From positions 370,689 to 434,688 of IMG/VR virus record IMGVR_UViG_3300038463_000730: a stretch of 64,000 nt of DNA; one strand, written 5' to 3'. Position numbers and translations under genes: made by a program. This document shows, one piece after another, positions 2,870 through 56,404 of the stretch. The notes beneath the pieces are model-generated. The model searched no databases. It saw only the letters and a program-made list of their open reading frames with translations, and was not told the DNA's origin. Position 1 is the stretch's first letter, and each line of letters opens with the position of its first letter.

Positions 2870-2911
2870 TTCTCCGTATCTTAATTTCTCGTAAACGTCT
2901 TTCCCATTTAG

Positions 2912-2986
2912 AGCCCACAGCTGGATTCAAACCAACGACTCCGCAGCACGAAGGCCGCGTACTCTGATCAACTGAGTTATGTGGGC
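2912..2986 (-). tRNA. tRNA-like, Arg(UCG)-like with 8-nt anticodon loop
   Basis: Full cloverleaf; stem CGCGG/CTGCG encloses CCTTCGTG; T loop TTTGAAT; no CCA. Confidence 0.65.
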
Positions 2987-3004
2987 AAAACTGTTACCGT
3001 AACT

Positions 3005-3080
3005 TGGAGCCCAGGGTTGGATTTGAACCAACGACCTTCCGATTAAAACCGGCTGCTCTAACAGACTGAGCTACCCGGGC
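3005..3080 (-). tRNA. tRNA-like, Lys(UUU)-like with 6/8-nt anticodon loop
   Basis: Cloverleaf with encoded CCA; CCGG-TTTTAA-TCGG. Confidence 0.65.
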
Positions 3081-3108
3081 CAATAATGAAACTATGAATT
3101 GAAGGTCA

Positions 3109-3158
3109 ACGATCGACCTCCGCGTGAAGTCTGCACCTGGGTGCATCGTACCGATCGT
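3109..3158 (-). ncRNA. Small structured spacer RNA
   Basis: 8-bp stem 3109-3116/3151-3158 enclosing hairpin TGCAC-CCAG-GTGCA. Confidence 0.3.
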
Positions 3159-3179
3159 AAGTAGGAAACCGTTAACCAG

Positions 3180-3257
3180 TGGGGAGTGCTGCTTTCGAGA
3201 CAGCGACCACTCCGGGTCGAAACCTTTCGTTGCTCTACCATTCTGAGCTAACTCCCC
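3180..3257 (-). ncRNA. tRNA-like RNA without a recognisable anticodon arm
   Basis: GGGGAGT/ACTCCCC acceptor, perfect D arm, T arm GCTGT-CTCGAAA-GCAGC; anticodon region contains GGT-TTCG-ACC. Confidence 0.65.
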
Positions 3258-3287
3258 GTAAACTACAACTCGACAAACGTAACTTGT

Positions 3288-3719
3288 TCATATCTGAACA
3301 ATGAATCGACCGGCCTCCTCAATTCCTTCGATCACCGATCGAGCCGTTGCTCGGTCTAGATCTTTTTGCTCTTCAGAAAGTTCCGTATACGGAACAAACA
3401 AATCCTCACCCTTCGAACTATAATACTCTTTGAACCCTTGCGATTTCTTCTTTGTCATCCAGCCTTCGTGGACTTTATCCGCAATCACTTCCAATACCGT
3501 TACATCTTCGAACTTCGAAAAATACACATCCATTCGGTACATCAACTCTTCGCCAATATCACCGTCTCCACCAGCCTGGAGATCCAGCTGTCCGTCACAT
3601 TGATCTTCATCAATCTTTCGAATTGCATTGAAAAGAGTAACAGACTGTTTGTTATGCGGAATTCCTTGCTCCCAACGTTCTTCAACGGTTAGTTTGGACG
3701 TGTCTTTTTTCTTCTTCAT
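3288..3719 (-). CDS. RyR-domain protein
   Basis: IADKVHEGW...FVPYTELSEEQKDLDR matches the RyR repeat; start moved to the ATG just after the tRNA-like element. Confidence 0.7.
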   Translation of the reverse strand: MKKKKDTSKLTVEERWEQGIPHNKQSVTLFNAIRKIDEDQCDGQLDLQAGGDGDIGEELMYRMDVYFSKFEDVTVLEVIADKVHEGWMTKKKSQGFKEYYSSKGEDLFVPYTELSEEQKDLDRATARSVIEGIEEAGRFIVQI

Positions 3720-3722
3720 GAG

Positions 3723-3797
3723 CGGGACGAGCCGGATTTGAACCAACGTTCGGGCAGATTTCGCCACCCGTATCCTAAGCCACTAGATGATCGTCCC
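3723..3797 (-). tRNA. tRNA-like RNA with extended anticodon arm (no clear anticodon)
   Basis: GGGACGA/TCGTCCC acceptor, Glu/Asp-type D arm, CGGGT-GGCGAAATCT-GCCCG (10-nt loop), 3-nt variable loop. Confidence 0.6.
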
Positions 3798-3807
3798 AAA
3801 GAAAAAC

Positions 3808-3905
3808 GATTCAGAAACCTCACTAACATTTCGAACTATTAGTGCTGCACGTAAGCTTTCAATAATATAAATCAGAAATCTGTTTTATGCTTACTTTCGT
3901 GAATC
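3808..3905 (-). ncRNA. Structured RNA with T-loop-like hairpin
   Basis: Outer stem GATTCA/TGAATC, stem GTAAGC/GCTTAC, hairpin CACTAATA-GTTCGAAA-TGTTAGTG. Confidence 0.4.
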
Positions 3906-3912
3906 ATCTTCT

Positions 3913-3990
3913 TGGCTCGCGCTGATGGATTTGAACCACCGACCTTCCACCCGCTAAGGTGAACGCTCTAACAGACTGAGCTAAGCGCGA
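3913..3990 (-). tRNA. tRNA-like, Val-type body with 8-nt anticodon loop CUUAGCGG
   Basis: Cloverleaf with CCA; TTCAC/GTGGA stem; short variable loop. Confidence 0.65.
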
Positions 3991-3997
3991 ATGATAA

Positions 3998-4477
3998 TTA
4001 CTCGAACAATACTTTGTACACCTCCCGTAGTTTACCTAGCCAGGAGCGCCGAACGGGGCTCGAACCCGTGACCAAGGCATTTAGAGGGCCCTGCTCTGCC
4101 GCTGAGCTATCGACGCGCTTTAGGTCTACGTAGTTACGTAGAGCCAAAGGAAAGCTACTAGTAAGAGAGATCGACGACGCTGACCCAGGCTCAAATGCAA
4201 TCGCTGTTAGGCTATGATTAAGATCTTCTTCGGTAAAAGCTAAGTACCGAGCGCCTATTTCGTCTGCCTTCGCCTTGAGGCTAAGAAGGGCTGCTTCATT
4301 CTCAACACTTAATAGAACTACTGTGTTCGAGTTGACATGCCACTCTTTCGTAAGTTCGGGCCATGCCTGGCTAAAATCAATTGCTGCGTGCAACATCTGA
4401 GATGCCTGTTGGCCAGCACGCAAATCGTTTCGTGTAACGACATAGAATTTAGCAGGTGCGTTCGTCATCTACGACAT
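3998..4477 (-). CDS. Pth2-family peptidyl-tRNA hydrolase-like protein with in-frame TAG at codon 3 (alternative start at 4468)
   Basis: YVVTRNDL..GQQASQ..HAA, NTVVLLSV, E.DLNHSLTAIA, FPLAL motifs; SD GGAGAG 8 nt before ATG-TCG-TAG-ATG. Confidence 0.75.
4045..4116 (-). tRNA. Amber-suppressor tRNA (anticodon CUA) embedded in the pth2 ORF
   Basis: 72-nt cloverleaf; loop CT-CTA-AA (anticodon 4082-4084); one C31:U39 mismatch; no CCA. Confidence 0.8.
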
Positions 4478-20237: not shown

Positions 20238-21401
20238 TTACTCGACGCTCGTGATTACACCAGCGGCGACAGTTCGTCCACCCTCACGAACGGCGAACCG
20301 CACTCCAGGCTCCATCCCGACCGGCTTCTGTAGAAGCAACGTGACATCCGCGTTATCTCCTGGAGAGATCACGCTCTCGAAACCTTCGATGCTTCCCGTG
20401 ACATCGGTTGGCCCGAAAAAGAATTGAGGACGGTAACCCGCGCTGATTGCCGTGTGACGTCCGCCTTCCTTCGTCGGGATCATATACAGCTTCGCTTTAG
20501 CCTTGGTGTGAGGCTTGACGCTACCAGGCAGAATGATGATCTGTCCCTTCTCTACCTCATTGCGATCGACCCCGCGAAGTTTCAATCCGACATTTTCTCC
20601 GGCGCGCGCTTCCAATTGTGACTTGTGGAACATTTCGATTCCGGTCACGACAACCTCGCGCGGCTTCGAATCGACATCGACGAAGCCAATAATCTCGACC
20701 GTTGCGTTGACGGGCAACACACCGCGCTCGACCTTCCCGGTAACAACCGTTCCAATCCCTTTGATCGTGTGAACGCCTTCAATCGGCATCATGAACGGAG
20801 CATCATAGTTACGCACCGGATCGGTAATGTGAGTCTGCATTGCACCGAGTAACTCTTGGATGCAACCGCCATCCTCAGCCGGATTACGATAGGCCTTCAG
20901 TGCCGAACCTTTCACGACCGGCGAATCGGTATAGCCGTGCATCTTGAGGCAGTCGTTCACTTCCTCGATGACAAGTTCGAGCAACTCGGGGTCCGCCACG
21001 TCAACCTTGTTAACGAACACCACGATTTTCGAAACACCAACCTGTTTTGCCAACAGGATATGTTCCTTGGTCTGGTATTGTGTACCTTGAGAACCATCGA
21101 CCAACAGGATTGCGCCATCCATCTGCGCGGCTCCGGTGATCATGTTCTTGATGTAATCCGCGTGTCCGGGGCAATCGATATGCGCATAGTGACGCTTATC
21201 GGTCTCGTACTCGACGTGAGCGATCTGGATCGTAACGGTCTTCGAGTCATCTCGAACCGTTCCGCCCTTCGCGATATCCGCGTACTCTTTGCCCTTAGCA
21301 AGCTTCAACTGCTCCTGAACGGCCAGGATTGCCGCCGTGAGAGTTGTCTTACCATGATCAACGTGCCCAATCGTTCCAACATTCACATGTGTCTTTGACA
21401 T
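20238..21401 (-). CDS. tuf: Elongation factor Tu (divergent)
   Basis: GHVDHGKTT, DCPGHADYIKNMITGAAQMDG, NKVD, GSAL, GYRPQF. Confidence 0.97.
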   Translation of the reverse strand: MSKTHVNVGTIGHVDHGKTTLTAAILAVQEQLKLAKGKEYADIAKGGTVRDDSKTVTIQIAHVEYETDKRHYAHIDCPGHADYIKNMITGAAQMDGAILLVDGSQGTQYQTKEHILLAKQVGVSKIVVFVNKVDVADPELLELVIEEVNDCLKMHGYTDSPVVKGSALKAYRNPAEDGGCIQELLGAMQTHITDPVRNYDAPFMMPIEGVHTIKGIGTVVTGKVERGVLPVNATVEIIGFVDVDSKPREVVVTGIEMFHKSQLEARAGENVGLKLRGVDRNEVEKGQIIILPGSVKPHTKAKAKLYMIPTKEGGRHTAISAGYRPQFFFGPTDVTGSIEGFESVISPGDNADVTLLLQKPVGMEPGVRFAVREGGRTVAAGVITSVE

Positions 21402-28181: not shown

Positions 28182-28487
28182 CTATTTCACTCTCTTGTTC
28201 GAGTTCGCTGGGAACTCTGTATCTAATTCGTTGAGTGCTTCGTCGTATAGTTTGTTATAGTTCTTTTCAGCCTCCTTATTCAGGCGGTCAGCTTCAAGCT
28301 CCGCTTCGGATAGTCGGACTCGTTTCCTCGCTTCTGCGATCACTTCAGCAGCAGGATCTTTTGGCTTCAACTTATTCCACAGTACAGTGAAGAATTTGAC
28401 GCCAAGTATTACGACTAATCCTCCTCCGCCAAAAAGCAGGATTGCAGCTAAGAGTTCTTCAAAAGCGGGCATTGTTTTTTGACTCAC
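28182..28487 (-). CDS. Single-TM protein
   Basis: N-terminal TM plus coiled coil. Confidence 0.6.
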   Translation of the reverse strand: MSQKTMPAFEELLAAILLFGGGGLVVILGVKFFTVLWNKLKPKDPAAEVIAEARKRVRLSEAELEADRLNKEAEKNYNKLYDEALNELDTEFPANSNKRVK

Positions 28488-29659
28488 GGTTTAGCGAGAT
28501 TGTATCCTTCACCAACTAGCTTGACTTGCATCCGGCTATCCAAGCGAGGTTCATAACGTTCTTTGACCGTGTTGAGAACCCAGCCTTCGCGAAGGTGCTT
28601 ACCGCCAATCGTGGTCATACCTTCTGCCAACGGATACATCTCCTCCTTACCGAGCCACGGTCCCCGATAAAGCTCGGGCACCGGATCCAACCCGGCAGCC
28701 CGTATCATAGCGACCTTGTCGTCGTAATCCAAGTAACGTTTCGTGGATTCGTTGAAGACGTCAAAGACGAACAACTTCGTTTGCAAAGCTCCGTTCAAGA
28801 CAGTTGCTTCGTAACGAAATCCTTTGACTTGTCCTACAACTTCTCCGAAGAAGACCATCATCGGAAATTGCTGGAGTTTGTTTTCCAGATCGTAACGAAT
28901 CGCTATGTCCCACCACATATCGTCTTCGTCACGCTTCTTGTAGTAATTCCTGCTCTTAACCCAGAGCTGGGTACCGTCATGGCAAAAAGCTGCGTTCGAA
29001 CCATGAAGCTTTTCCGTGAGGACAACCTCTTCTTTCTCCTGAAGACAGAGAAGGTATTTCCTCACGCCATCGATGTCGTAGTGCGGGATAGTCCAGCCTT
29101 TTGGCGGCGAAGCTTGATTCGCACCTTTGGTCTTCTTCGCACCAGGAAGATTATCCTCTTCCTCTTCTTCGTGTTTCTTTAGCCAGAGCGCGTCAACGAT
29201 CTGATCACCAACGCTCCATGGAACATTAATGGTCTCGGCAGAGAGGCTTGCCAATCCTTCTGGCGGCAAGACACTTTGTTTCAGAATTGACTTCGCCGGA
29301 AGCAAAGTCAGCGGCATCAACATTCCTTGGGAATAAGTCCCACGAATGCGCTTCGCCTTGATGACCCGGTATTTTTCCGGGACCGATCCAACGGTATACT
29401 TAGGACCCAAACGGCGAGTCTTTAGCTCACCATTCTCCTCGTATTTCTCGTGGATGGCGGGACAAAGAAAGTAGAACGGATCCGTATCCGGAACGATCGA
29501 ATCGATCGGAATATAGCAAACCAGATCCCCAACTCGGTACTCGTCCCGCTTAACGATGACGGGGTAGTCCGTGAGAACGGTAGCAATATCCAGAACATCC
29601 GCATCAGGATGCTTACGGATCGACTCGATCACAACGACCTGAGGTTGCCAGTCAGACAT
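28484..29659 (-). CDS. RNA ligase, Rnl2/DRB0094 family
   Basis: N-terminal HPDAD..GDLVCYIPIDS module; motif I EKLHG; FGE, FVFD, REGWV, K motifs. Confidence 0.9.
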   Translation of the reverse strand: MSDWQPQVVVIESIRKHPDADVLDIATVLTDYPVIVKRDEYRVGDLVCYIPIDSIVPDTDPFYFLCPAIHEKYEENGELKTRRLGPKYTVGSVPEKYRVIKAKRIRGTYSQGMLMPLTLLPAKSILKQSVLPPEGLASLSAETINVPWSVGDQIVDALWLKKHEEEEEDNLPGAKKTKGANQASPPKGWTIPHYDIDGVRKYLLCLQEKEEVVLTEKLHGSNAAFCHDGTQLWVKSRNYYKKRDEDDMWWDIAIRYDLENKLQQFPMMVFFGEVVGQVKGFRYEATVLNGALQTKLFVFDVFNESTKRYLDYDDKVAMIRAAGLDPVPELYRGPWLGKEEMYPLAEGMTTIGGKHLREGWVLNTVKERYEPRLDSRMQVKLVGEGYNLAKP

Positions 29660-39398: not shown

Positions 39399-39626
39399 TT
39401 AGTCTCCGGTATGTTCGTAGCTTAGTAAGCTGTCTAAGTAATTATCGTCTTCAGCATCTTCTTCGCTATCGACGACTATGAAGTTGTGTAACGTTCGTTC
39501 CATGAGATAAGCTTCGAGTATCCTCTCCAACTCCTCGTTGGATTTTCGTTTCTCTCGAAGCTTATCTATTTTGTCTAGCGCGGCTTTTCTCGATACGGTA
39601 AGTGTTGAGTAGACGCCCATGTTCAA
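39399..39626 (-). CDS. Hypothetical protein
   Basis: ORF. Confidence 0.55.
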   Translation of the reverse strand: MNMGVYSTLTVSRKAALDKIDKLREKRKSNEELERILEAYLMERTLHNFIVVDSEEDAEDDNYLDSLLSYEHTGD

Positions 39627-40765
39627 TCTAGTGAGTCGTCACTACCTCCGCCACCGCAGTCACCACCGCCACCCGTGAAGGGATCATCATCGTCATCGTT
39701 CGAGCTGCTACCGCTACCCCAGCCCTTGTCCGTGTCATCACTATCATCGTCGTCATCATTCGACAGTATTAACGCAACCGCGCCGATCGCTCCGATTACT
39801 CCAGCCGCAACCTCCACATCCTCCACCACGTTACTTCGCCGTTCCTCGCGCTCTTCGTAGATCGGTGAGGTAGAGGGCTGCGGCGGAACGTAAGGCGGCG
39901 GTGCAACGTAGGCTCTGGGTCGCGAGTACGGAACCGGAACCGGAACCGGAACCGGTGTCGGAAGCGGAACGGTAGTACGTTCGTCAGAGAAACTAGGTTG
40001 CGGTGAATAGATCGGCGAAGCGTAGGCCGGGACAGGAGGAGTATATGAATAACTGTAGTTATCCTCATTCTTACGACGGAACATCCAGGCTGCCAACGCA
40101 ATGGCGCAACCAATCAATGCGAGCAAACCAAGAACAAATCCTGCTCCAACCGAGTCACTCTGAGGAGTGCTGGTTGCCGCCGCTGCTTCAGTAACGGGAG
40201 TGGTATTGTCGGTAGCCGTGTCGGTCGCTGGTGCAGTTACCGGAACATTGCTCACGCTCGTTGCAGTCAAGCCCTGGTCCACGCGCAATAGATTGGCCGC
40301 AGCACTCGTTCCATCGTCGATTGCTTTGCGGAGGTTCCCTGCCTTGAAAGGCGGGCGGATTTGGTTCTTGATGATGTCGTTGCATTGAACATCGGTTAGT
40401 GCTCCGCCTACTCCCTTCCCAGTATCGATTCGAGCTTTCCGATCATCCGTGACAATGAGGAACAATACCCCGTTGTCCTTCCCGCTCTTTCCTAGATGCC
40501 AGGAAGAGAATGTGGAATACCCTATGTCCTTGATGTCTTCCCCATTGAGTTTCGAAATGACCAGTACTGCGATCTCGTTCGTCGTCTGTCGGTTTTCGAC
40601 TTCGAGTTGGTGATCCAAATACTTCACGTCAGCCGTAGACAATCGGCCCGACTGATCAACGACATGATGACCGTTGAGCGGTGGAGGAGTGAATGCAAAG
40701 GCGACGTGCGGCATAACCAAAATGGTTAGGGCCAAAACCAAACTTGAAAGGAAAGTCTTATTCAT
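39623..40765 (-). CDS. TPM-domain membrane protein
   Basis: Signal peptide, VVDQSGRLS, EIAVLVI, WHLG..DNGVLFLI..DRKARIDTGKG, GGG tail. Confidence 0.85.
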   Translation of the reverse strand: MNKTFLSSLVLALTILVMPHVAFAFTPPPLNGHHVVDQSGRLSTADVKYLDHQLEVENRQTTNEIAVLVISKLNGEDIKDIGYSTFSSWHLGKSGKDNGVLFLIVTDDRKARIDTGKGVGGALTDVQCNDIIKNQIRPPFKAGNLRKAIDDGTSAAANLLRVDQGLTATSVSNVPVTAPATDTATDNTTPVTEAAAATSTPQSDSVGAGFVLGLLALIGCAIALAAWMFRRKNEDNYSYSYTPPVPAYASPIYSPQPSFSDERTTVPLPTPVPVPVPVPYSRPRAYVAPPPYVPPQPSTSPIYEEREERRSNVVEDVEVAAGVIGAIGAVALILSNDDDDDSDDTDKGWGSGSSSNDDDDDPFTGGGGDCGGGGSDDSLD

Positions 40766-40805
40766 GACACTCAACTTAGGTTGGGAGTAGACGTGGCCAG
40801 CGCAG

Positions 40806-40997
40806 TTACTTGTGATCGATGCGACTCTCGATGTACTTCGTAACTTCATCGAAGGACTTGTCCGCAGCTTCGAACTTCTTCGTCAGCTCCGGGTCGTTGA
40901 TCATCTTGATATGTTCCGCAGCATGCTTCAACGGAGCCTTCTGTTGCTGAAGATACGTGACCACCTGAACGAGACGAGACTTTGTATCTAGCGCCAT
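40806..40997 (-). CDS. Hypothetical protein
   Basis: ORF with SD. Confidence 0.55.
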   Translation of the reverse strand: MALDTKSRLVQVVTYLQQQKAPLKHAAEHIKMINDPELTKKFEAADKSFDEVTKYIESRIDHK

Positions 40998-41855: not shown

Positions 41856-43184
41856 CTAAACGAGGCGCTTTTCTGCCACGTTGGCCTTCGGAAGAGGCGA
41901 TCCTACACCCTTTTCCACAGGAGGCAACCGTTCCTGTTGCACGTTTGAAAGGCGACGCTTTGCAAGCTTGATGAACTTTCGTGGCAACCCGACAGCTACC
42001 ATTATCGTTTCCAATTGACGCCGTTTGTAGGGCAAAGAATTGCGGCGCTTTACCTCCAATGCCAGAAGTTTTTCGGCCTTGACCTTCATTCTCTCAAGCT
42101 TCCGCAACGTCTTCAAAAGATTGAGCCTTGCCTTCAGCATAGCAAATGCCTCTCGCTTTTTGGTCCAAGCCATGCTCTTCCGACGACGTTCGATCTGACG
42201 AGGACTCGCCGGTCTTTCGCCATTGATCACAACACGAGCGTTGTTCTTCGAACGCTCTGCAATGACTCGTTCAACCTCGGAGGTTATGAAAAGGAATTCG
42301 AAATCGTCCAGCGGAGATAGGATCGATTTGAGTCCTGCTTCCGTTACCCAGCGCTTTGTGATCTGCCATCCAATACCAATCCTATGCGCGATGGCAGTGA
42401 GTGTGTCTCGACCTACCATTAGTGCGAGATTGGCAGCAACGACCCGATCAATCGTGGCAGTACTGACCCACCAAAGACAATTGTTCGACGGTCGCTCTTC
42501 TCCGGCAGCTTCGAGCCATTTGCGAAGTCGAACTTTGTTTATCCCGCGCTTTGTTGCAGCCGGACCAACAACCTCGGCATTCTTCACCCAATGCGCGGCG
42601 GCTTCATCAACTTCCTCAATCCAAACGTAATGCCGGTCACACGCTTTGCGCTCGGGAGTCTTCTTCTTGTTCCTCTTCCATGCCTTCCTTCGAACCCTGT
42701 TCTTCCAGGATTTTGGGTATGTTTTGCATGGAAAGATTTCCACTTCGCTGAAGGCTAGTATCTTCTTCAGCATATTGAGACTGGTGAAACCAGTCCGCCT
42801 ACAAGCAGACATTAGAGACTCGGCGCCTTCGGGAGGCCCGACATACAACTCCATGGTCATCGCCCGCTTGATGACCGAAGCTTGCGAGCGGTTCAAACCC
42901 TTGGCAATTGCAGCGACGGTACTGAACTCCCACTCACCGAGTAGGTACTGTAGCTCGTGAGGTTCCCACCGCTTGTGGCCCTTGGCAGCTTGGAGCCCGA
43001 GCTTACCGCCCATCGCCATGATGGCGGACTTGGAACGATTCGGCAGTAACTTCATTATCGCGCGAACACTTTTGCCTTCGTAGTTCGCCTTAATGATTTC
43101 GAGTTCCTCGGGCTTCCAAACCCGGCCCCAAGGTCCACCCTTCTGCGGCGTTGCTTGCTCGTGAGAGATTGCTGCAACCATCAT
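41856..43184 (-). CDS. Basic protein with Myb/SANT-like and HTH-like repeats
   Basis: WKPEELE..LPNRS, WEPHELQ..LNRS repeats. Confidence 0.65.
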   Translation of the reverse strand: MMVAAISHEQATPQKGGPWGRVWKPEELEIIKANYEGKSVRAIMKLLPNRSKSAIMAMGGKLGLQAAKGHKRWEPHELQYLLGEWEFSTVAAIAKGLNRSQASVIKRAMTMELYVGPPEGAESLMSACRRTGFTSLNMLKKILAFSEVEIFPCKTYPKSWKNRVRRKAWKRNKKKTPERKACDRHYVWIEEVDEAAAHWVKNAEVVGPAATKRGINKVRLRKWLEAAGEERPSNNCLWWVSTATIDRVVAANLALMVGRDTLTAIAHRIGIGWQITKRWVTEAGLKSILSPLDDFEFLFITSEVERVIAERSKNNARVVINGERPASPRQIERRRKSMAWTKKREAFAMLKARLNLLKTLRKLERMKVKAEKLLALEVKRRNSLPYKRRQLETIMVAVGLPRKFIKLAKRRLSNVQQERLPPVEKGVGSPLPKANVAEKRLV

Positions 43185-44461
43185 CGCCTCTGCTGCAAAG
43201 CTAGCTTACGTTTCGCCGCTTGCTTCGCCGCACGTCTTGCTTTCTTTCGCTCTCGAAGTTTCACTTTTGCCAACGCTAGTTCGGCCCTAGCTTTACGTTT
43301 GGCATCTCGCTCCACTATCCGTTGCTGCTGCGCCCTCAGCTTGAGAACGACGAGGAATGAACGTTGAGCGGCTTTCGTTTCTCGAATCCTCCAACGAAGA
43401 ATGGAGATGAATCTCCGATACTCCATTTTGGAATGATTGACTCGAACGCCATTCACTCGGGCGAGAACACTCTTCGATAGGTTTTCCCCGACAACCCGAT
43501 CCACGTCAGCCGGATCAAGTCTCCACTGGCGAGTCTTCGGGTTCCAATCGAACCCCGCTTTTCTCAACCATAGCCGGAGTGACTCGTACCAGAGCCCATG
43601 CCGATCCGCAGCTTGGAGCAGTGTTTCGAAGCGACTGTCTTCCTCACGCTTCTTTCGCCAATCCGCAACGAGCTTGTCGAGCGTCTTGCTATTTAGCCTG
43701 AGGGCAAACTTTTTGTCTTTCGAGACAACCTTTAGTCCGGCCGCGATGAGTATATCAGTGAGCCGGTGCTGAGAGATTTCGAGACGTTCGGCAGCCTTGG
43801 GAATTGTCTCGGTCTCGGTAACCCACTTCCTTACGGCCTCTTCCGCCTCCATGATGTCAACGTAGCGGTGCGGAGCCTTGAACCGCCTGCGCGTCGTTCG
43901 CTTGGTACGCTTCCGTTTTCCCTGAGGGATTGTTGGAAGGCGCGTTACCTTGACATTGAAGTGCTCCAATATTCCGTAGAACGTGGAGGGCTCGTAACCC
44001 ATCTTGTTTGCAACGGCAGTAACGAAGTCGCATCCTTCAGGCGGACCTTTGTGGAGGCCGAGATTTTCCGCCTTGTTGATGATAGCCCTTATCTTTCGAT
44101 TCAATTCACGAGCAATGATATGGGGTTTGGTAAACTCCCATTCGCTTTCGATGTATTGAATCTCATCATCCGTCCAACGACGACGATGATTCCCGTTGAC
44201 CTTGATCCCGAGCTTCTCCGCTTTCTGAACCAGCGAGGAATGGGTACGGCCAGGTAAGAGCTTGAGAGCTTTCTTCGGTCCTAACTCCGGGTATTGAGTC
44301 TTGACAATTTCGATTTCCGCAGCGGACCAGAACTTTCGTTGCGCCGTGTTCTGAACACGTTTCGGGTTCGAAACCTCAACGAGTTTCGCCGGTCCTTCGA
44401 ATTGTACTGCCGTTGCGGTCATCGGACCAATCGACGTACTACGCCGAGATCCGGCTGTCAA
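43181..44461 (-). CDS. Basic protein with Myb/SANT-like and HTH-like repeats (tandem paralog)
   Basis: WSAAEIE..LPGRT, WTDDEIQ..LNRK repeats. Confidence 0.65.
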   Translation of the reverse strand: MTAGSRRSTSIGPMTATAVQFEGPAKLVEVSNPKRVQNTAQRKFWSAAEIEIVKTQYPELGPKKALKLLPGRTHSSLVQKAEKLGIKVNGNHRRRWTDDEIQYIESEWEFTKPHIIARELNRKIRAIINKAENLGLHKGPPEGCDFVTAVANKMGYEPSTFYGILEHFNVKVTRLPTIPQGKRKRTKRTTRRRFKAPHRYVDIMEAEEAVRKWVTETETIPKAAERLEISQHRLTDILIAAGLKVVSKDKKFALRLNSKTLDKLVADWRKKREEDSRFETLLQAADRHGLWYESLRLWLRKAGFDWNPKTRQWRLDPADVDRVVGENLSKSVLARVNGVRVNHSKMEYRRFISILRWRIRETKAAQRSFLVVLKLRAQQQRIVERDAKRKARAELALAKVKLRERKKARRAAKQAAKRKLALQQRR

Positions 44462-44500: not shown

Positions 44501-45217
44501 TCAGTGCGTGTGATCTCCGCCCGTCACATAGGCTGAGCAAACATCGCACCACCGCCCTGTAGGCAATGGCCCAACGTGAACGCCAATTTCATCGCTCGGC
44601 TTCCCCTGAATCGCCAGCATTAGCCGATCAACACCGATAGCCCAGCCGATTCCTTCCTTGTAACGCCCGCCTCCAGCAATTTGCTTCTGCGCTCCAAGAT
44701 ACGATACTTCGGCCTCGAACCCGTCCTCCACGTAATAGGAGAGTCCTCGCTTGACCGTATCATTGAATTGATACGGGATGCCGAAAAGATTCAGCGTCTC
44801 CTTCAATGCTTTTACCGCATCTTCTTTCGTGACCCGATTCCCGAGGAGTTCGACTCCAGCCTGGGTAAACTCGCGGTGACGACCAGCCTGCGGCTTCTCG
44901 TAGCGATAGCACCGTTGGATGTAAAAGATCTTCATTGGGTGACGAACGCGATTGTGCCATTCGTCATTCCACATCTTCTGAACAACCGCCGTACATTCCG
45001 GAATCAAACAGATGTCACGATCGCCTTTGTCTTTGAAGGCGTACATTTGATTGATGATTTCAGGCCCGGCCTTATCGATGAAGGTCTGTTGATCCCACAT
45101 TGATGGCAGAAGGATCTCGTTGAACCCTTGTGCAACGAGGGCTGCACGAATCCCTTGACAGGTAGAAAAGTAAAGATCTGCTTCTTCACCAATCAGCAAT
45201 CGCGTGCCTTTCACCAT
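44501..45217 (-). CDS. Truncated histidyl-tRNA synthetase-like catalytic core
   Basis: LIPECT, motif 2 YRYEKPQAGRHREFTQAGVE, RGLSYY, GGGRY, motif 3 GWAIGVDRL. Confidence 0.85.
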   Translation of the reverse strand: MVKGTRLLIGEEADLYFSTCQGIRAALVAQGFNEILLPSMWDQQTFIDKAGPEIINQMYAFKDKGDRDICLIPECTAVVQKMWNDEWHNRVRHPMKIFYIQRCYRYEKPQAGRHREFTQAGVELLGNRVTKEDAVKALKETLNLFGIPYQFNDTVKRGLSYYVEDGFEAEVSYLGAQKQIAGGGRYKEGIGWAIGVDRLMLAIQGKPSDEIGVHVGPLPTGRWCDVCSAYVTGGDHTH

Positions 45218-45225
45218 AACCGCTC

Positions 45226-45435
45226 CTATCGACGACCAAAGAACGTGGACCTAATGTCTACGGCATACAGGCGTGCCACCTCAACGATACGGTACCACAC
45301 TCGGCGGCGAAAGGCCATCGTTGTCCAACCGTTCCAGCAATGGGAGCAGGCGCACCAGTCGTAGCACGGTCCATCGCTAAACTTTCGACTAGTGAACTTG
45401 AACCGTCTCAATTTAGACAGGTACCGCTTGAGCAT
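45226..45435 (-). CDS. Small Cys-containing hypothetical protein
   Basis: ORF. Confidence 0.45.
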   Translation of the reverse strand: MLKRYLSKLRRFKFTSRKFSDGPCYDWCACSHCWNGWTTMAFRRRVWYRIVEVARLYAVDIRSTFFGRR

Positions 45436-45790
45436 TGTCTTTTCCCCAGATCCACCCTAGAGAGAAAACAATCCGAGTTCCCTCGGTAACTTCCGTGACA
45501 CGGTGCGGGTTGATGTCAGGTCGGAAGATATGTAGACGTCCCCAATCCACGATCGTTTCGCCACAAAGGAAATCCCCACCTTTGCCGCGCCACAATTCAA
45601 AATTCAAACGGTAATGATTACCGAATGGATTTGGGTCACTATGCCATCCAATTGACGATCCCTTCGGGTAGTGAAGAATGTATGAATCGAACCGAATCGG
45701 AATCGGATATATCCATCTCATCAAAGGGAAGATCCGATATCCCGTGCCTTGACGCCCTGGTGTCCAACGGAAAAGTTTGGGTAGCTTCAT
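45413..45790 (-). CDS. Minimal 2OG-Fe(II) oxygenase
   Basis: YPKG..IGWHSD, HRVT, TRIVFS. Confidence 0.8.
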   Translation of the reverse strand: MKLPKLFRWTPGRQGTGYRIFPLMRWIYPIPIRFDSYILHYPKGSSIGWHSDPNPFGNHYRLNFELWRGKGGDFLCGETIVDWGRLHIFRPDINPHRVTEVTEGTRIVFSLGWIWGKDNAQAVPV

Positions 45791-54857: not shown

Positions 54858-56366
54858 TTATTGGACCAAGTAGAGAGAGTGACGTGCCCGAGAAGCCGCG
54901 ACGTAATATACGTTCGCTTCCTCCGGATTCTTGTTTTTGTGGAAGGTCTTCGAGAGCATGAACACACGGTCCCGCTCATCTCCCTTCGCTCGGTGTGCCG
55001 TGCTGAGCATGACACGATCCTTGAAGCTGCCTGCCTGAAACATCGTGCGAATACGTTCACGCACTTGATCCAATTGGGTCAGACCTTCACAGAGAGCATC
55101 GACACAAGCCTCCTTGTCATCGACCCACTCGGTCTTCTTATCCAGTGCGACCAGTTGCTCGCGACGTTCGCGGCACCACTCACGATTCCAATCTCGGAAG
55201 CCCTCAACCGACAAGGCTCCTGATTTTGAAATGGCGTATGTATACTGCCACGAAACATCTCGGCCAAGAATATTGGCCGGGCGCCCAACAGAGTTGAGCT
55301 TCGTGCAGATGCGCATGAGAGGGGCGTTTGTTCGCGCCAGGATGTAGTCTCCAGCGCGTGTCTCCTTCAACATGTCGTCCGTTGCCATGTTGGCTACGAG
55401 CCCGTCAGGAGCACCAGGAGCAGCCTCGATGTCAGGCACGATTTCCTGAAGCAATTTAACTATGTTCCGTGCGCACCGGTACGTGACCGAAAGCGGCAGA
55501 ACATGCGCATTGGTTTGTTCGATGATACGCTGAATCGATTTGGCATCGGCGCCATTCCAACCGTACAGAGCTTGCCTATCATCGCCTACCGCGATCATGC
55601 GCCCACCTTCACGGAGCGACTTCATGATCACCGCGAACTGCGCCGGAGCAAGATCTTGTCCCTCGTCCAGCATGACGCAATCGTGTTGCGGAACGTCGAG
55701 TCCCAGCACGACCGGAAGATAAATCATGTCAGCGAAGTCGATCGACTTAGTTTGTTCCCGATTACGCTTGAGAACTTCCAAGGTAATCTGAACGAACTGT
55801 TTGCGATCCGAGCCCTTGCCAGCATCGATGTCGTACGTGTCGATCACATTCTCGATGCCTTCTTCGGTATCGAGCAGCGTAACCTTACACTTTTGTACGC
55901 ATTCAGTCAGCTGTTCGATCATCCCGGTATTCTCCGGACCAATGATTCCCTTGATGATGTTGGGAACCTTAACTCCAGGACGAATCTTCTCCTTTGGATC
56001 GATACGAACCTTCAGCGGCTTGAGAGCTTGGAAACCGATGCTGTAGCTCGTCTGAGCCTGGACCTTATCCAAGTCCGATAGACGAGCTGCGATCGTATCC
56101 TTGATGTCGGTATTGAACGCGCACACCAGGATCCCGACATTCGGAGTAACTTCGTTCACCTTGCGAACGAGCATCTCGATCGTCGTGGTCTTCCCTGTTC
56201 CGGCCCGAGCCAACACAACAACATTCTCGCGTGAGTTCTGAATGAAGTTGAGAATGTTTGCTTGTGCGGGGCTGGGTGCGGGTAGCGGCTTTTGTTCTCG
56301 CTCGACAGCTACCGGCTTCTTGTAACCCCGATAACTACCTTTCTTTGCTGATGATCTGTACGCCAT
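54858..56366 (-). CDS. UvrD/Rep-like superfamily 1 helicase
   Basis: ARAGTGKTT, DEGQD, VGDDRQ, TYRC, STAHRAKG.E, YVAASRA. Confidence 0.92.
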   Translation of the reverse strand: MAYRSSAKKGSYRGYKKPVAVEREQKPLPAPSPAQANILNFIQNSRENVVVLARAGTGKTTTIEMLVRKVNEVTPNVGILVCAFNTDIKDTIAARLSDLDKVQAQTSYSIGFQALKPLKVRIDPKEKIRPGVKVPNIIKGIIGPENTGMIEQLTECVQKCKVTLLDTEEGIENVIDTYDIDAGKGSDRKQFVQITLEVLKRNREQTKSIDFADMIYLPVVLGLDVPQHDCVMLDEGQDLAPAQFAVIMKSLREGGRMIAVGDDRQALYGWNGADAKSIQRIIEQTNAHVLPLSVTYRCARNIVKLLQEIVPDIEAAPGAPDGLVANMATDDMLKETRAGDYILARTNAPLMRICTKLNSVGRPANILGRDVSWQYTYAISKSGALSVEGFRDWNREWCRERREQLVALDKKTEWVDDKEACVDALCEGLTQLDQVRERIRTMFQAGSFKDRVMLSTAHRAKGDERDRVFMLSKTFHKNKNPEEANVYYVAASRARHSLYLVQ

Positions 56367-56376
56367 GGTATTCCTC

Positions 56377-56404
56377 ATCATAGCACTTAACGTGAAGTAG
56401 TCAA
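56377..56404 (-). promoter_or_regulatory. Sigma70-type promoter of the helicase gene
   Basis: TTGACT-16-TATGAT with extended -10 TG. Confidence 0.6.

What the first reader, a model, noticed from the sequence alone, without database searches (positions are those of the whole stretch)
44501..45217. Miniature HisRS: catalytic core without insertion or anticodon-binding domains
Seen: motifs 2 and 3 and the histidine-binding RGLxYY and GGGRY motifs are intact in 238 aa, but there is no anticodon-binding domain and the tail ends in WCDVC. Established: HisRS identity rests mainly on the acceptor stem, whereas HisZ paralogs lose the catalytic motifs. Inference: it may charge tRNA-like RNAs, make Ap4A or histidylate another substrate. 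No tRNA-His is present in this window.
Basis: partly seen in the sequence, partly recalled or inferred. Interest (0 to 1): 0.6.

Follow-up and report, generated by a model that had tools for sequence, protein, structure and literature searches.

The report
Minimal histidyl-tRNA synthetase of huge phages
This gene encodes a half-size histidyl-tRNA synthetase with only the catalytic core, one of a large undescribed family in huge phages that usually sits beside a histidine tRNA gene, so it probably charges the phage's own tRNA-His by reading only the acceptor end.

Summary
Window 44501-45217 (-) is an intact 238-aa ORF with HisRS motifs 1-3, HisA and HisB. It lacks the helical insertion domain, an 11-residue loop before motif 3, and the anticodon-binding domain.

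It is not a recent truncation. More than 1,100 relatives of about 165-215 aa share this architecture, mostly on 250-670 kb phage contigs. The sampled minis form one clade apart from 60 full-length HisRS (SH-aLRT 99). dS is saturated while dN is 0.18-0.41.

All residues that bind ATP and histidine are conserved. So are those that bind the G-1 phosphate and the C70-A76 strand of tRNA-His, including the Gln that covaries with G-1:C73.

In related phages the nearest tRNA gene is tRNA-His in 9 of 21 loci (1.7 expected, P about 8e-7). This includes cultured Sinorhizobium phage Phosso. The window's own genome carries one tRNA-His with templated G-1 and C73, 66 kb away. It also has two Thg1-like genes and no other aaRS homologue.

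Best reading: a dimeric, acceptor-stem-only HisRS for phage tRNA-His (inferred, untested).

Novel possibility: in Rhizobiales-type hosts, whose HisRS rejects G-1:C73 tRNA-His, this is a natural orthogonal pair.

I found no description of the family in ten literature searches.

The parts
44501..45217 (-). mini-HisRS ORF, 238 aa, ATG start, TGA stop
   Evidence: identical in three assemblies
45223..45227 (-). AGGAG ribosome-binding site, 6 nt before the ATG
   Evidence: read directly from the sequence
45092..45217 (-). Residues 1-42: N-terminal K3-G-T-R6 segment, helix 10-29 and the motif 1 strand with Pro38. This is the predicted dimer interface. K3 aligns with T. thermophilus Arg7, which contacts G-1 and C68.
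44990..45037 (-). Residues 61-76, FKDKGDRDICLIPECT. This is the counterpart of the Tt 70-DRGGR-74 loop, which forms the G-1 pocket from the other subunit. It also holds the histidine-binding E74 and T76 (E. coli E83 and T85).
44840..44935 (-). Residues 95-126: motif 2 with its tRNA-binding loop. R105, E107, K108, Q110, R113, R115, Q119 and E123 correspond to E. coli R113, E115, R116, Q118, R121, R123, Q127 and E131.
44771..44839 (-). Residues 127-149: a single helix and a short linker in place of about 89 residues of bacterial HisRS (about 159-247), which include the helical insertion domain.
44732..44755 (-). Residues 155-162, HisA motif VKRGLSYY. R157 corresponds to the E. coli catalytic R259.
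44660..44677 (-). Residues 181-186, HisB motif AGGGRY. It is followed directly by motif 3, because the 11-residue loop of E. coli HisRS (289-301) is absent.
44612..44653 (-). Residues 189-202: motif 3, GIGWAIGVDRLMLA. R198 corresponds to E. coli R311.
44504..44605 (-). Residues 205-238: a C-terminal tail specific to this protein, with C224-x2-C227 and H236-x-H238. It may be a zinc knuckle. It is absent from the 77-81% identical relatives and has low model confidence.

Best explanation
The ORF encodes a functional, homodimeric minimal histidyl-tRNA synthetase from a family specific to huge phages. It activates histidine with ATP in a complete class II active site and transfers it to A76 of the phage-encoded tRNA-His(GUG).

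It selects that tRNA only through the acceptor end. The 5' phosphate and base of G-1 are held by the motif-2 Arg/Lys pair and by the loop from the partner subunit. The C70-A76 strand is held by the motif-2 loop, including the Gln that goes with C73. No anticodon is read.

It gives the phage its own supply of His-tRNA-His alongside its tRNAs, EF-Tu and tRNA-repair enzymes.

Shown here: the architecture, the conservation, the family and its monophyly, the linkage to tRNA-His genes, and the presence of a G-1:C73 tRNA-His in the genome. Inferred: histidine activation, tRNA charging, the dimer, and the benefit to the phage.
For: Fold and motifs: (AlphaFold pLDDT 88; best Foldseek hits are E. coli HisRS, TMq 0.75-0.79).

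Conservation: 47 invariant columns in 79 family members include every ATP, histidine and acceptor-contact residue. These map to E. coli numbering and to the contacts seen in the T. thermophilus HisRS-tRNA complex (PMC4357726). In that complex the insertion-domain contacts are weak: the R197A mutant keeps more than half the activity and K209A is like wild type. The invariant motif-2 Gln is the ancestral residue that covaries with G-1:C73 (PMC3937112).

Selection: dN 0.18-0.41 with saturated dS.

Family: 1,158 hits, and of the best 120 listed 116 are 164-243 aa long (four of 268-296 aa carry N- or C-terminal extensions). 28 IMG/VR loci lie mostly on 250-608 kb contigs. All 35 sampled minis form one clade against 60 full-length HisRS, SH-aLRT 99.

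Linkage: the nearest tRNA is tRNA-His in 9 of 21 non-redundant loci against 1.7 expected, P=8.5e-7. In Phosso a G-1:C73 tRNA-His lies 275 bp upstream. In LR745206 two tRNA-His genes lie within 3 kb.

Own genome: one tRNA-His with templated G-1, C73 and CCA; two Thg1-like genes; no anticodon-binding domain anywhere.

Dimer: predicted homodimer score 0.90, best of 3 controls 0.00. That mark was reached by 21 of 30 proteins solved as pairs and 0 of 23 solved as single chains. Runs agree in at least 98% of contacts and pLDDT is 90. The pass may come from memory of solved HisRS dimers.

Precedent: the engineered 320-residue E. coli catalytic domain and 119-145-residue urzymes keep activity (PMC3060492). 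Minihelices are HisRS substrates (PMC3064791).
Against: In this phage the tRNA-His gene is 66 kb from the synthetase, and the adjacency is strongest in the N-terminally shorter subfamily, not in the window's subclade.

The engineered E. coli catalytic domain is about 2000-fold less active than the full enzyme, so a core this small could be a poor enzyme.

The window protein has K108 and H114 where the family has Arg and Tyr. It has G-D where T. thermophilus has the G-G of the G-1 pocket, and C. crescentus HisRS blocks that pocket with D-D.

One relative (G016) has only a G-1-less, A73 tRNA-His next to the gene.

The score against the hisS equivalog model is well under the cut-off.
Confidence: 0.62

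Rival explanations
1. It is a histidine-adenylating enzyme that does not use tRNA. It would pass histidine to a carrier protein, small molecule or nucleic-acid base, or make Ap4A, as other stripped-down class II paralogues do (amino acid:carrier-protein ligases, AsnA).
For: It has lost both appended tRNA-binding domains. Chromosomal relatives in Pseudomonas and Paraburkholderia sit among metabolic genes (GNAT, TauD, metallophosphoesterase) and not beside tRNAs. Other small class II cores of unknown role exist in phages.
Against: The residues that bind only tRNA are invariant or nearly so: the counterparts of the G-1 phosphate-binding Arg pair, the Gln/Arg contacts to C70-C74, and the Glu contact to A76. 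The genes lie in tRNA arrays, next to tRNA-His far more often than chance. The ORFs on either side of the gene that were scanned against Pfam show no carrier protein: the 426-aa ORF at 43181-44461 and the 125-aa ORF at 45413-45790.
Confidence: 0.13
2. It is a non-catalytic or regulatory HisRS mimic. Either it is a HisZ-like partner of ATP phosphoribosyltransferase, or it is a subunit that forms heterodimers with host HisRS to tune or poison it.
For: One relative is named 'ATP phosphoribosyltransferase regulatory subunit' by NCBI (P0113). The class II dimer interface is kept.
Against: All catalytic residues are under strong constraint, which a mimic would not need. The hisZ model scores 74 bits against a cut-off of 272, and hisS scores twice as high. 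There is no HisG in the genome.
Confidence: 0.07
3. It charges unusual phage RNAs with histidine rather than tRNA-His: the window's tRNAs with 6-nt anticodon loops, the tRNA(CUA), or tRNA-like structures.
For: HisRS ignores the anticodon and accepts minihelices and viral tRNA-like structures (PMC3064791). Such odd tRNAs are present at 2911-4116.
Against: None of the four has C73, and none has a G-1:C73 pair. Their discriminators are U, U, G and U. Only one (3005-3080) has a templated G at -1, and it lies opposite U73. The family's linkage is to tRNA-His(GUG) genes.
Confidence: 0.05
4. It is a recently truncated or decaying fragment of a full-length hisS picked up from a host.
For: It is short and scores under the hisS equivalog cut-off. 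One relative (L024) is frameshifted.
Against: More than a thousand relatives share the same architecture. They form a clade separate from full-length HisRS. No remnant of an anticodon-binding domain occurs in any frame of the genome. The next gene starts 39 nt after the stop. Purifying selection is strong.
Confidence: 0.02

Closest known systems
Bacterial histidyl-tRNA synthetase (HisS; E. coli 2EL9/1KMM, T. thermophilus 4RDX)
   Same: It has the class II fold; motifs 1-3; the HisA and HisB motifs; the motif-2 loop RPQxGRxR(E/Q)FxQ that holds G-1 and the 3' strand; and a predicted dimer through motif 1.
   Different: It is about half the size. It has no helical insertion domain, no 289-301 loop and no anticodon-binding domain. 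It scores 158 bits against a cut-off of 287 for the hisS equivalog model. It is encoded by phages and forms its own clade.
Engineered E. coli HisRS fragments: the Ncat catalytic domain (residues 1-320) and the HisRS urzymes (119-145 aa)
   Same: They show that a HisRS without the anticodon-binding domain, and even without the insertion domain, still activates histidine (PMC3060492).
   Different: Those are laboratory constructs with 2e3- to 9e6-fold lower activity. Ncat keeps the insertion domain, and the urzymes lack the HisA loop. The phage protein is a natural, selected intermediate of about 205 aa that keeps HisA, HisB and motif 3.
HisZ (regulatory subunit of ATP phosphoribosyltransferase)
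   Same: It is a HisRS paralogue without an anticodon-binding domain, and it is the second-best family match (3od1).
   Different: HisZ keeps the insertion region, has lost adenylation activity (PMC9437257) and works with HisG. Here the catalytic residues are invariant and no HisG is encoded.
The two orthogonal bacterial HisRS/tRNA-His systems: the G-1 type and the alpha-proteobacterial delta-G-1 type
   Same: The phage enzyme carries the G-1-type signature (motif-2 Gln; Gly-Gly or Gly-Asp in the pocket loop). Phage tRNA-His genes occur in both types.
   Different: The known systems are cellular and use full-length enzymes. Here a G-1-type pair is carried by phages, at least one of which infects a host of the delta-G-1 group: Phosso on S. 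meliloti.
Other small stand-alone class II cores of phages in BFVD (for example K7QJG2 of Escherichia phage phAPEC8, 185-222 aa)
   Same: They are of similar size and have the same core fold.
   Different: They are only 10-18% identical, carry no HisA or HisB signature and have no known function.

Membership tests
Histidyl-tRNA synthetase (class IIa, hisS) | Class II motifs 1, 2 and 3 with the catalytic Arg residues | tested here: met
   R105, R113 and R198 correspond to E. coli R113, R121 and R311 and are invariant in 79 relatives.
Histidyl-tRNA synthetase (class IIa, hisS) | Histidine-specific HisA (RGLxYY) and HisB (GGGRY) motifs, and the E/T of LRPEGT | tested here: met
   RGLSYY at 157-162, GGGRY at 182-186, plus E74 and T76.
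Histidyl-tRNA synthetase (class IIa, hisS) | Score at or above the curated cut-off of the hisS equivalog model TIGR00442 | tested here: not met
   158.3 bits against a cut-off of 286.75. The Pfam tRNA-synt_His domain cut-off is passed.
Histidyl-tRNA synthetase (class IIa, hisS) | Insertion domain between motif 2 and HisA | tested here: not met
   T. thermophilus residues about 159-238 have no counterpart. The model shows one helix there.
Histidyl-tRNA synthetase (class IIa, hisS) | C-terminal HGTP anticodon-binding domain | tested here: not met
   The protein ends 40 residues after the motif-3 Arg (R198). PF03129 is absent from all six frames of the 434,688-bp genome.
Histidyl-tRNA synthetase (class IIa, hisS) | Homodimer through motif 1 | tested here: inconclusive
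   Prediction only: score 0.90, best of 3 controls 0.00. The mark was reached by 21 of 30 solved pairs and 0 of 23 single chains. Contacts agree at 98% or more; pLDDT is 90. The pass may reflect memory of solved HisRS dimers.
Histidyl-tRNA synthetase (class IIa, hisS) | Histidine activation and G-1-dependent charging of tRNA-His | not testable with these tools
   Needs ATP-PPi exchange and aminoacylation assays.
HisZ | Catalytic residues lost; works with HisG; passes the hisZ equivalog model | tested here: not met
   Catalytic residues are invariant. TIGR00443 scores 73.7 bits against a cut-off of 271.65. No HisG in the genome.
Phage mini-HisRS family (defined here) | About 165-215 aa core with motifs 1-3, HisA and HisB; no insertion or anticodon-binding domain; encoded on huge-phage genomes | tested here: met
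   52-81% identity to the best 119 relatives listed. It nests inside the mini clade. Its own contig is 502,994 bp.
Phage mini-HisRS family (defined here) | Gene lies in a tRNA array next to tRNA-His | tested here: not met
   In this genome the nearest tRNA is tRNA-Thr, about 4 kb away, and tRNA-His is 66 kb away. Linkage holds for 9 of 21 relatives.
Amino acid:carrier-protein ligases (class II paralogues that do not use tRNA) | Adjacent carrier protein; tRNA-contact residues lost | tested here: not met
   The ORFs on either side that were scanned against Pfam (43181-44461 and 45413-45790) show no carrier domain. The tRNA-contact residues are conserved. Only these two neighbours were scanned.

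The most novel reading that the evidence does not exclude
The mini-HisRS and the G-1:C73 tRNA-His form a natural, phage-borne orthogonal aaRS/tRNA pair.

Rhizobiales, Rhodobacterales, Caulobacterales and their relatives use a G-1-less, A73/U72 tRNA-His. Their divergent HisRS charges E. coli-type tRNA-His about 250-fold worse (PMC3064791). Phage Phosso infects S. meliloti. Its only detected tRNA-His is the G-1:C73 type and lies 275 bp from its mini-HisRS. That enzyme keeps the Gln and Gly-Gly signatures of G-1 recognition.

In such hosts the phage tRNA-His would be useless without the phage enzyme. The pair would also be insulated from the host's control of histidine charging. This could explain why HisRS is the only synthetase in the window's phage.

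Several relatives carry a second, host-type tRNA-His as well, and 11 of 18 carry Thg1-like enzymes that could install or repair G-1.
Probability: 0.3. Interest if true: 0.85.

Novelty: new variant of a known kind. Interest (0 to 1): 0.72.

Why it matters
This would be the smallest natural aminoacyl-tRNA synthetase architecture for histidine. At about 170-215 aa, it sits between the engineered E. coli catalytic domain and the HisRS urzymes used as models of ancestral synthetases.

A widespread, selected enzyme of this size would show directly how much of a class II synthetase is needed for specific tRNA charging. It would do so for the one tRNA whose identity sits almost entirely in the acceptor end.

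It also bears on how huge phages take over translation. In this phage it is the only synthetase, alongside tRNAs, an EF-Tu homologue, an RNA ligase and two Thg1-like enzymes.

If the orthogonality idea holds, it is a natural example of what genetic-code engineers build by hand. It would also supply a compact, anticodon-blind HisRS/tRNA pair. A cultured member (Sinorhizobium phage Phosso) makes all of this testable.

Tried and rejected
- **One search is void.** I gave the wrong locus coordinates for the tRNA-His query (937-1015 instead of 10938-11015 of L033). BLAST is in any case too insensitive for tRNAs.
- **Covariance model R1 is not specific.** Built from 19 tRNA-His genes, it also matches other tRNAs. 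I used it only to fetch the top hits, then typed them with ARAGORN.
- **Host inference failed.** EF-Tu is about 52% identical to all bacterial EF-Tu, and the helicase is closest to unrelated phages. The host stays unknown.
- **Two papers not held.** Wang et al. 2007 and Ardell & Andersson 2006 were unavailable. I relied on PMC3064791 and PMC3937112 instead.
- **PHROGs gave no family**.
- **No consistent Thg1 linkage.** Thg1 genes are not consistently near the mini-HisRS gene.
- **The big all-against-all protein search was not run**, as the operators advised. No claim here rests on the absence of relatives.
- **HisZ sequences could not be added to the tree.** The HisZ comparison rests on HMM scores and residue conservation.
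- **Literature.** Ten searches found no description of this family. That is not proof that none exists.
Full report
**1. The observation**

Window 44501-45217 (minus strand) is an uninterrupted 238-codon ORF. It has an ATG start, an AGGAG site 6 nt upstream and a TGA stop. It lies in a long run of minus-strand genes in DNA of about 48-50% G+C. The same 714 nt were recovered without a single difference in a 502,994-bp JGI contig and in two independent Logan assemblies. The length and the stop codon are therefore not assembly artefacts.

The protein matches Pfam tRNA-synt_His (E=1.2e-17) and the NCBIfam hisS equivalog (E=2.8e-46), but at 158 bits against a cut-off of 287. The hisZ model scores only 74 bits. 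PHROGs gives nothing.

Against solved structures the best match is T. thermophilus HisRS. Query 2-147 aligns with chain residues 8-158, and query 135-205 with 239-320. So the insertion domain and everything beyond the catalytic domain are missing.

An alignment with Klebsiella HisRS, which has the same length as E. coli HisRS (E. coli residue numbers from my own knowledge), places the deletions at about 159-247, 289-301 and beyond 320. An AlphaFold model (pLDDT 88, pTM 0.81) is a compact class II core. Its best Foldseek matches are E. coli HisRS chains (TMq 0.75-0.79, E about 1e-16).

WCDVC is at residues 223-227, not at the very end. And a tRNA-His gene exists in the same genome, outside the window.

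**2. Not a truncation: a large family**

A word-based search of 5.8 billion proteins gave 1,158 hits at E <= 1e-3. Of the 120 best, which are 52-81% identical to the query, 116 are 164-243 aa long; four of 268-296 aa carry N- or C-terminal extensions. Many come from very long contigs, up to 669 kb. The median tail after the motif-3 arginine is 10 residues.

IMG/VR holds 28 loci, most on contigs of 250-608 kb. Several of those contigs have terminal repeats and 100% estimated completeness.

Among deposited phages the family occurs in:
- the cultured Sinorhizobium phage Phosso (469 kb, 61% identity, annotated 'histidyl-tRNA synthetase');
- more distantly (41-43%), two 635-642 kb metagenomic phages.

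In a maximum-likelihood tree, all 35 mini sequences form one side of a branch with SH-aLRT 99. The 35 comprise 30 from phages and 5 from bacterial assemblies. The other side holds 60 full-length bacterial and archaeal HisRS. The full-length set is a biased sample, namely those that share the family's peptide patterns, and the root is unknown.

Between the window gene and its relatives dN is 0.18-0.41, while dS is saturated. Where a ratio can be computed it is 0.07-0.14.

No trace of an HGTP anticodon-binding domain occurs in any frame of the 434,688-bp genome record. The next gene starts 39 nt after the stop codon.

About a quarter of the family is shorter still. These members begin just before motif 1 and lack the first 25 or so residues.

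**3. What is conserved**

Forty-seven columns are invariant among 79 members. Mapped to E. coli numbering, they include:
- the motif 2 arginines (R113, R121);
- E131 and Q127;
- the HisA arginine R259 and Y263/Y264;
- the GGxY residues of the GGGRY motif (its Arg, R185 here, varies in a few members);
- the motif 3 arginine R311;
- T85 (E83, E74 here, is conserved in at least 90% of members).

More telling are residues that matter only for tRNA. In the T. thermophilus HisRS-tRNA-His complex (PMC4357726):
- Arg115 and Arg122 hold the 5' phosphate of G-1;
- Arg7 contacts G-1 and C68;
- Gln117, Lys118 and Arg120 contact C70-C74;
- Glu114 contacts A76;
- the 70-DRGGR-74 loop of the other subunit forms the G-1 pocket.

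The counterparts here are K108 (Arg in most of the family), R115, K3 (Arg or Lys in the family), Q110, R113, E107 and D63-K64-G65-D66-R67. All are invariant or nearly so, apart from K3, K108 and the G65-D66 pair.

The same paper reports that the insertion-domain contacts are made by non-conserved residues. R197A keeps more than half the activity and K209A behaves like wild type.

The motif-2 Gln is the ancestral state that covaries with the G-1:C73 pair. The alpha-proteobacterial clade that lost G-1 has Gly there (PMC3937112).

A homodimer is predicted with score 0.90, against a best of 3 controls of 0.00. That mark was reached by 21 of 30 proteins solved as pairs and 0 of 23 solved as single chains. 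The runs agree in at least 98% of contacts and pLDDT is 90. The interface uses residues 1-17, 33-42 and 61-69, that is motif 1 and the G-1-pocket loop. Because HisRS dimers are solved, this shows likeness, not binding.

**4. Genomic company**

The window belongs to a virus record of 434,688 bp. It has 24 tRNA genes, including exactly one tRNA-His(GUG), at genome position 348937-349013 on the minus strand. That is 66 kb from the synthetase. It has a templated G at -1, G1-C72, C73 and an encoded CCA, the classical bacterial identity set.

The genome also encodes two Thg1-like 3'-5' nucleotidyl transferases, each with both Pfam domains. The window itself encodes an EF-Tu homologue and an RNA ligase.

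The mini-HisRS is the only match in this record to ten aaRS catalytic-domain families: Pfam tRNA-synt_1, 1b, 1c, 1d, 1e, 1g, 2, 2b, 2c and 2d. The 68 kb of the contig outside the record were not searched.

Related phages carry 23-76 tRNAs and several other synthetases. Thg1 is present in 11 of 18.

**5. Linkage to tRNA-His**

In the related loci the gene is embedded in tRNA arrays. Among 21 non-redundant loci with tRNAs within 10 kb, the nearest tRNA is tRNA-His in 9. If the nearest tRNA were a random draw from each locus, 1.7 would be expected; the Poisson-binomial P is 8.5e-7. This is not corrected for shared ancestry.

In five loci a tRNA-His lies within 15-120 nt of the gene; in four of them it starts 15-51 nt after the stop codon. 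In Phosso a tRNA-His lies 275 bp upstream. In the distant 635-kb phage two lie within 3 kb.

Of ten records searched with the tRNA-His model (nine at 97-100% and one at 90% estimated completeness), nine have a G-1:C73 tRNA-His among the top hits.

The adjacency is strongest in the N-terminally short subfamily. In the window's own subclade it is seen in L006, but not in L007, L023, L031 or the window.

**6. Two kinds of phage tRNA-His**

The phage tRNA-His genes fall into groups:
- Type A: templated G-1, G1-C72, C73.
- Type B: no G at -1, G1-U72, C2-G71, A73 (once U73).
- A few genes: a templated G-1 opposite A73.

Type B matches the tRNA-His of the alpha-proteobacterial clade comprising Rhizobiales, Rhodobacterales, Caulobacterales and relatives. 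That tRNA lacks G-1 and is recognised through the anticodon, U72 and A73 by a divergent HisRS (PMC3064791; PMC3937112).

That work showed the two systems to be orthogonal. C. crescentus HisRS charges E. coli tRNA-His about 250-fold worse than its own. Its G-1 pocket is blocked by two aspartates.

Phosso infects S. meliloti, a member of the Rhizobiales. Yet the only tRNA-His detected in it is type A, next to a mini-HisRS with the Gln and Gly-Gly signatures. This prompts the novel reading that the pair is orthogonal to the host system.

Points against generality:
- The host of the window's phage is unknown.
- The distant members come from metagenomic phages whose hosts were not determined here.
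- One relative (G016) has only a type B gene beside the synthetase.
- Most relatives encode further synthetases.

**7. Mechanism and rivals**

The best-supported account is an acceptor-stem-only HisRS that serves the phage's tRNA-His. I put it at 0.62.

The rivals are weaker for these reasons:
- A tRNA-independent adenylating enzyme (0.13) does not explain why tRNA-only contacts are conserved, nor the tRNA-His linkage.
- A HisZ-like or dominant-negative mimic (0.07) does not explain why the catalytic residues are conserved, and no HisG is encoded.
- Charging of the window's odd tRNAs (0.05) is unlikely. They have U or G at position 73 and no G-1:C73 pair.
- A recent truncation (0.02) is contradicted by sections 1 and 2.

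The activity could be low. The engineered E. coli catalytic domain loses about 2000-fold (PMC3060492). The window protein also has three departures from the family consensus (K108, H114, D66).

**8. The tail**

Residues 205-238 are absent from the 77-81% identical relatives. They hold C224-x2-C227 and H236-x-H238 around a predicted beta-hairpin of low confidence.

Two other members carry unrelated Cys-rich tails at the same place: P0039, with a precomputed DnaJ CxxCxGxG-type Pfam hit (PF00684), and P0115. Small zinc-binding additions at the point where the anticodon-binding domain is normally attached may add RNA affinity. This is speculation.

**9. Novelty**

Databases label these proteins histidyl-tRNA synthetase, or in one case HisZ. 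Ten full-text searches found no paper that describes a minimal phage HisRS, its linkage to tRNA-His, or the two tRNA-His types in phages.
- The huge-phage survey mentions synthetases only in general (PMC7162821).
- The jumbo-phage overview mentions sporadic Thg1 and no conserved aaRS complement (PMC7824862).
- The paper on a 471-kb Sinorhizobium jumbo phage does not mention a synthetase (PMC11242549).

I class it as a new variant of a known kind.

Noticed in passing
L005:10704-10776, L009:8994-9069, L013:9264-9339, L015:9287-9360, L030:9372-9447: Huge phages carry a second kind of tRNA-His(GUG) with no templated G-1, G1-U72, C2-G71 and A73 (once U73). This matches the G-1-less tRNA-His of Rhizobiales, Rhodobacterales and Caulobacterales, and may mark the host group of these phages. 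A third kind has a templated G-1 opposite A73 (L010:9356, L024:12627, L170:7265).
   Followed up: partly
own genome outside the window: G000:C1:284360-285154 (-) and 269328-270131 (-); loci L003, L004: Two Thg1-like 3'-5' nucleotidyl transferase genes (Pfam Thg1 plus Thg1C). The family is present in 11 of 18 related huge-phage records but in only 1 of 14 control cellular genomes. They could add or repair G-1 of tRNA-His.
   Followed up: partly
window 20238-21401 (-), 28484-29659 (-), 54858-56381 (-), 39623-40849 (-): An EF-Tu homologue with all three domains (about 52% identical to bacterial EF-Tu), an RNA ligase with an OB domain, a UvrD-type helicase and a TPM-domain phosphatase. The first two are further parts of a phage translation and tRNA-repair toolkit.
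   Followed up: partly
window 2911-2986, 3005-3080, 3913-3990, 4043-4116 (all -): Three tRNA genes that ARAGORN draws with 6-nt anticodon loops (two-base 'anticodons' tc, tt, ag), plus a tRNA with anticodon CUA (amber suppressor type). tRNA(CUA) genes also occur in the related loci L009, L010 and L015. The mini-HisRS ORF ends in TGA and holds no in-frame TAG.
   Followed up: partly
window 41856-43184 (-) and 43181-44461 (-): Two tandem paralogous ORFs (442 and 426 aa) lie directly downstream of the mini-HisRS. They share a repeated W-x2-E-E/I-x-I-x-K...LLP-x-R motif and a Lys/Arg-rich C-terminal third. The 426-aa ORF has only a faint IF2_N match; the 442-aa ORF was not scanned.
   Followed up: no
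L091:2977-3558, L093:2935-3564, L094, L095, L092 (Pseudomonas cerasi, Pseudomonas sp. Au-Pse12, Paraburkholderia aspalathi and P. caffeinilytica, a Burkholderiales MAG): Chromosomal mini-HisRS-like genes of 193-209 aa, 43-48% identical to the query, nest within the mini-HisRS clade. Four of the five form their own tight group. They have GGGAY (one GAGAY) where HisB is GGGRY, and they sit among unrelated metabolic genes rather than tRNAs.
   Followed up: partly
PV764938 (Phosso) 172624-173127 and 170010-170894; G001:154679-155749; G004:174947-175993: Phosso has a second small (251-aa ORF) class II core next to a CysRS. Related phages have 517-527-aa ORFs matching the Ile/Leu/Val-type class I family, about half the usual size. 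Reduced synthetases may be a general habit of these phages.
   Followed up: no
L024:10001-10622: The mini-HisRS homologue of this 252-kb record is out of frame from codon 74 (TGA, then nonsense). It is either a pseudogene or an assembly error.
   Followed up: partly
window 45413-45790 (-): The ORF just upstream of the mini-HisRS (125 aa) has a weak match to the 2OG-Fe(II) oxygenase superfamily, below the Pfam cut-off.
   Followed up: no
whole record G000: IMG/VR classes the 434,688-bp record as a 'provirus' cut from a 502,994-bp contig. Its gene content is that of a huge lytic-type phage: tRNAs, EF-Tu and so on. The trimmed 68 kb were not examined.
   Followed up: no
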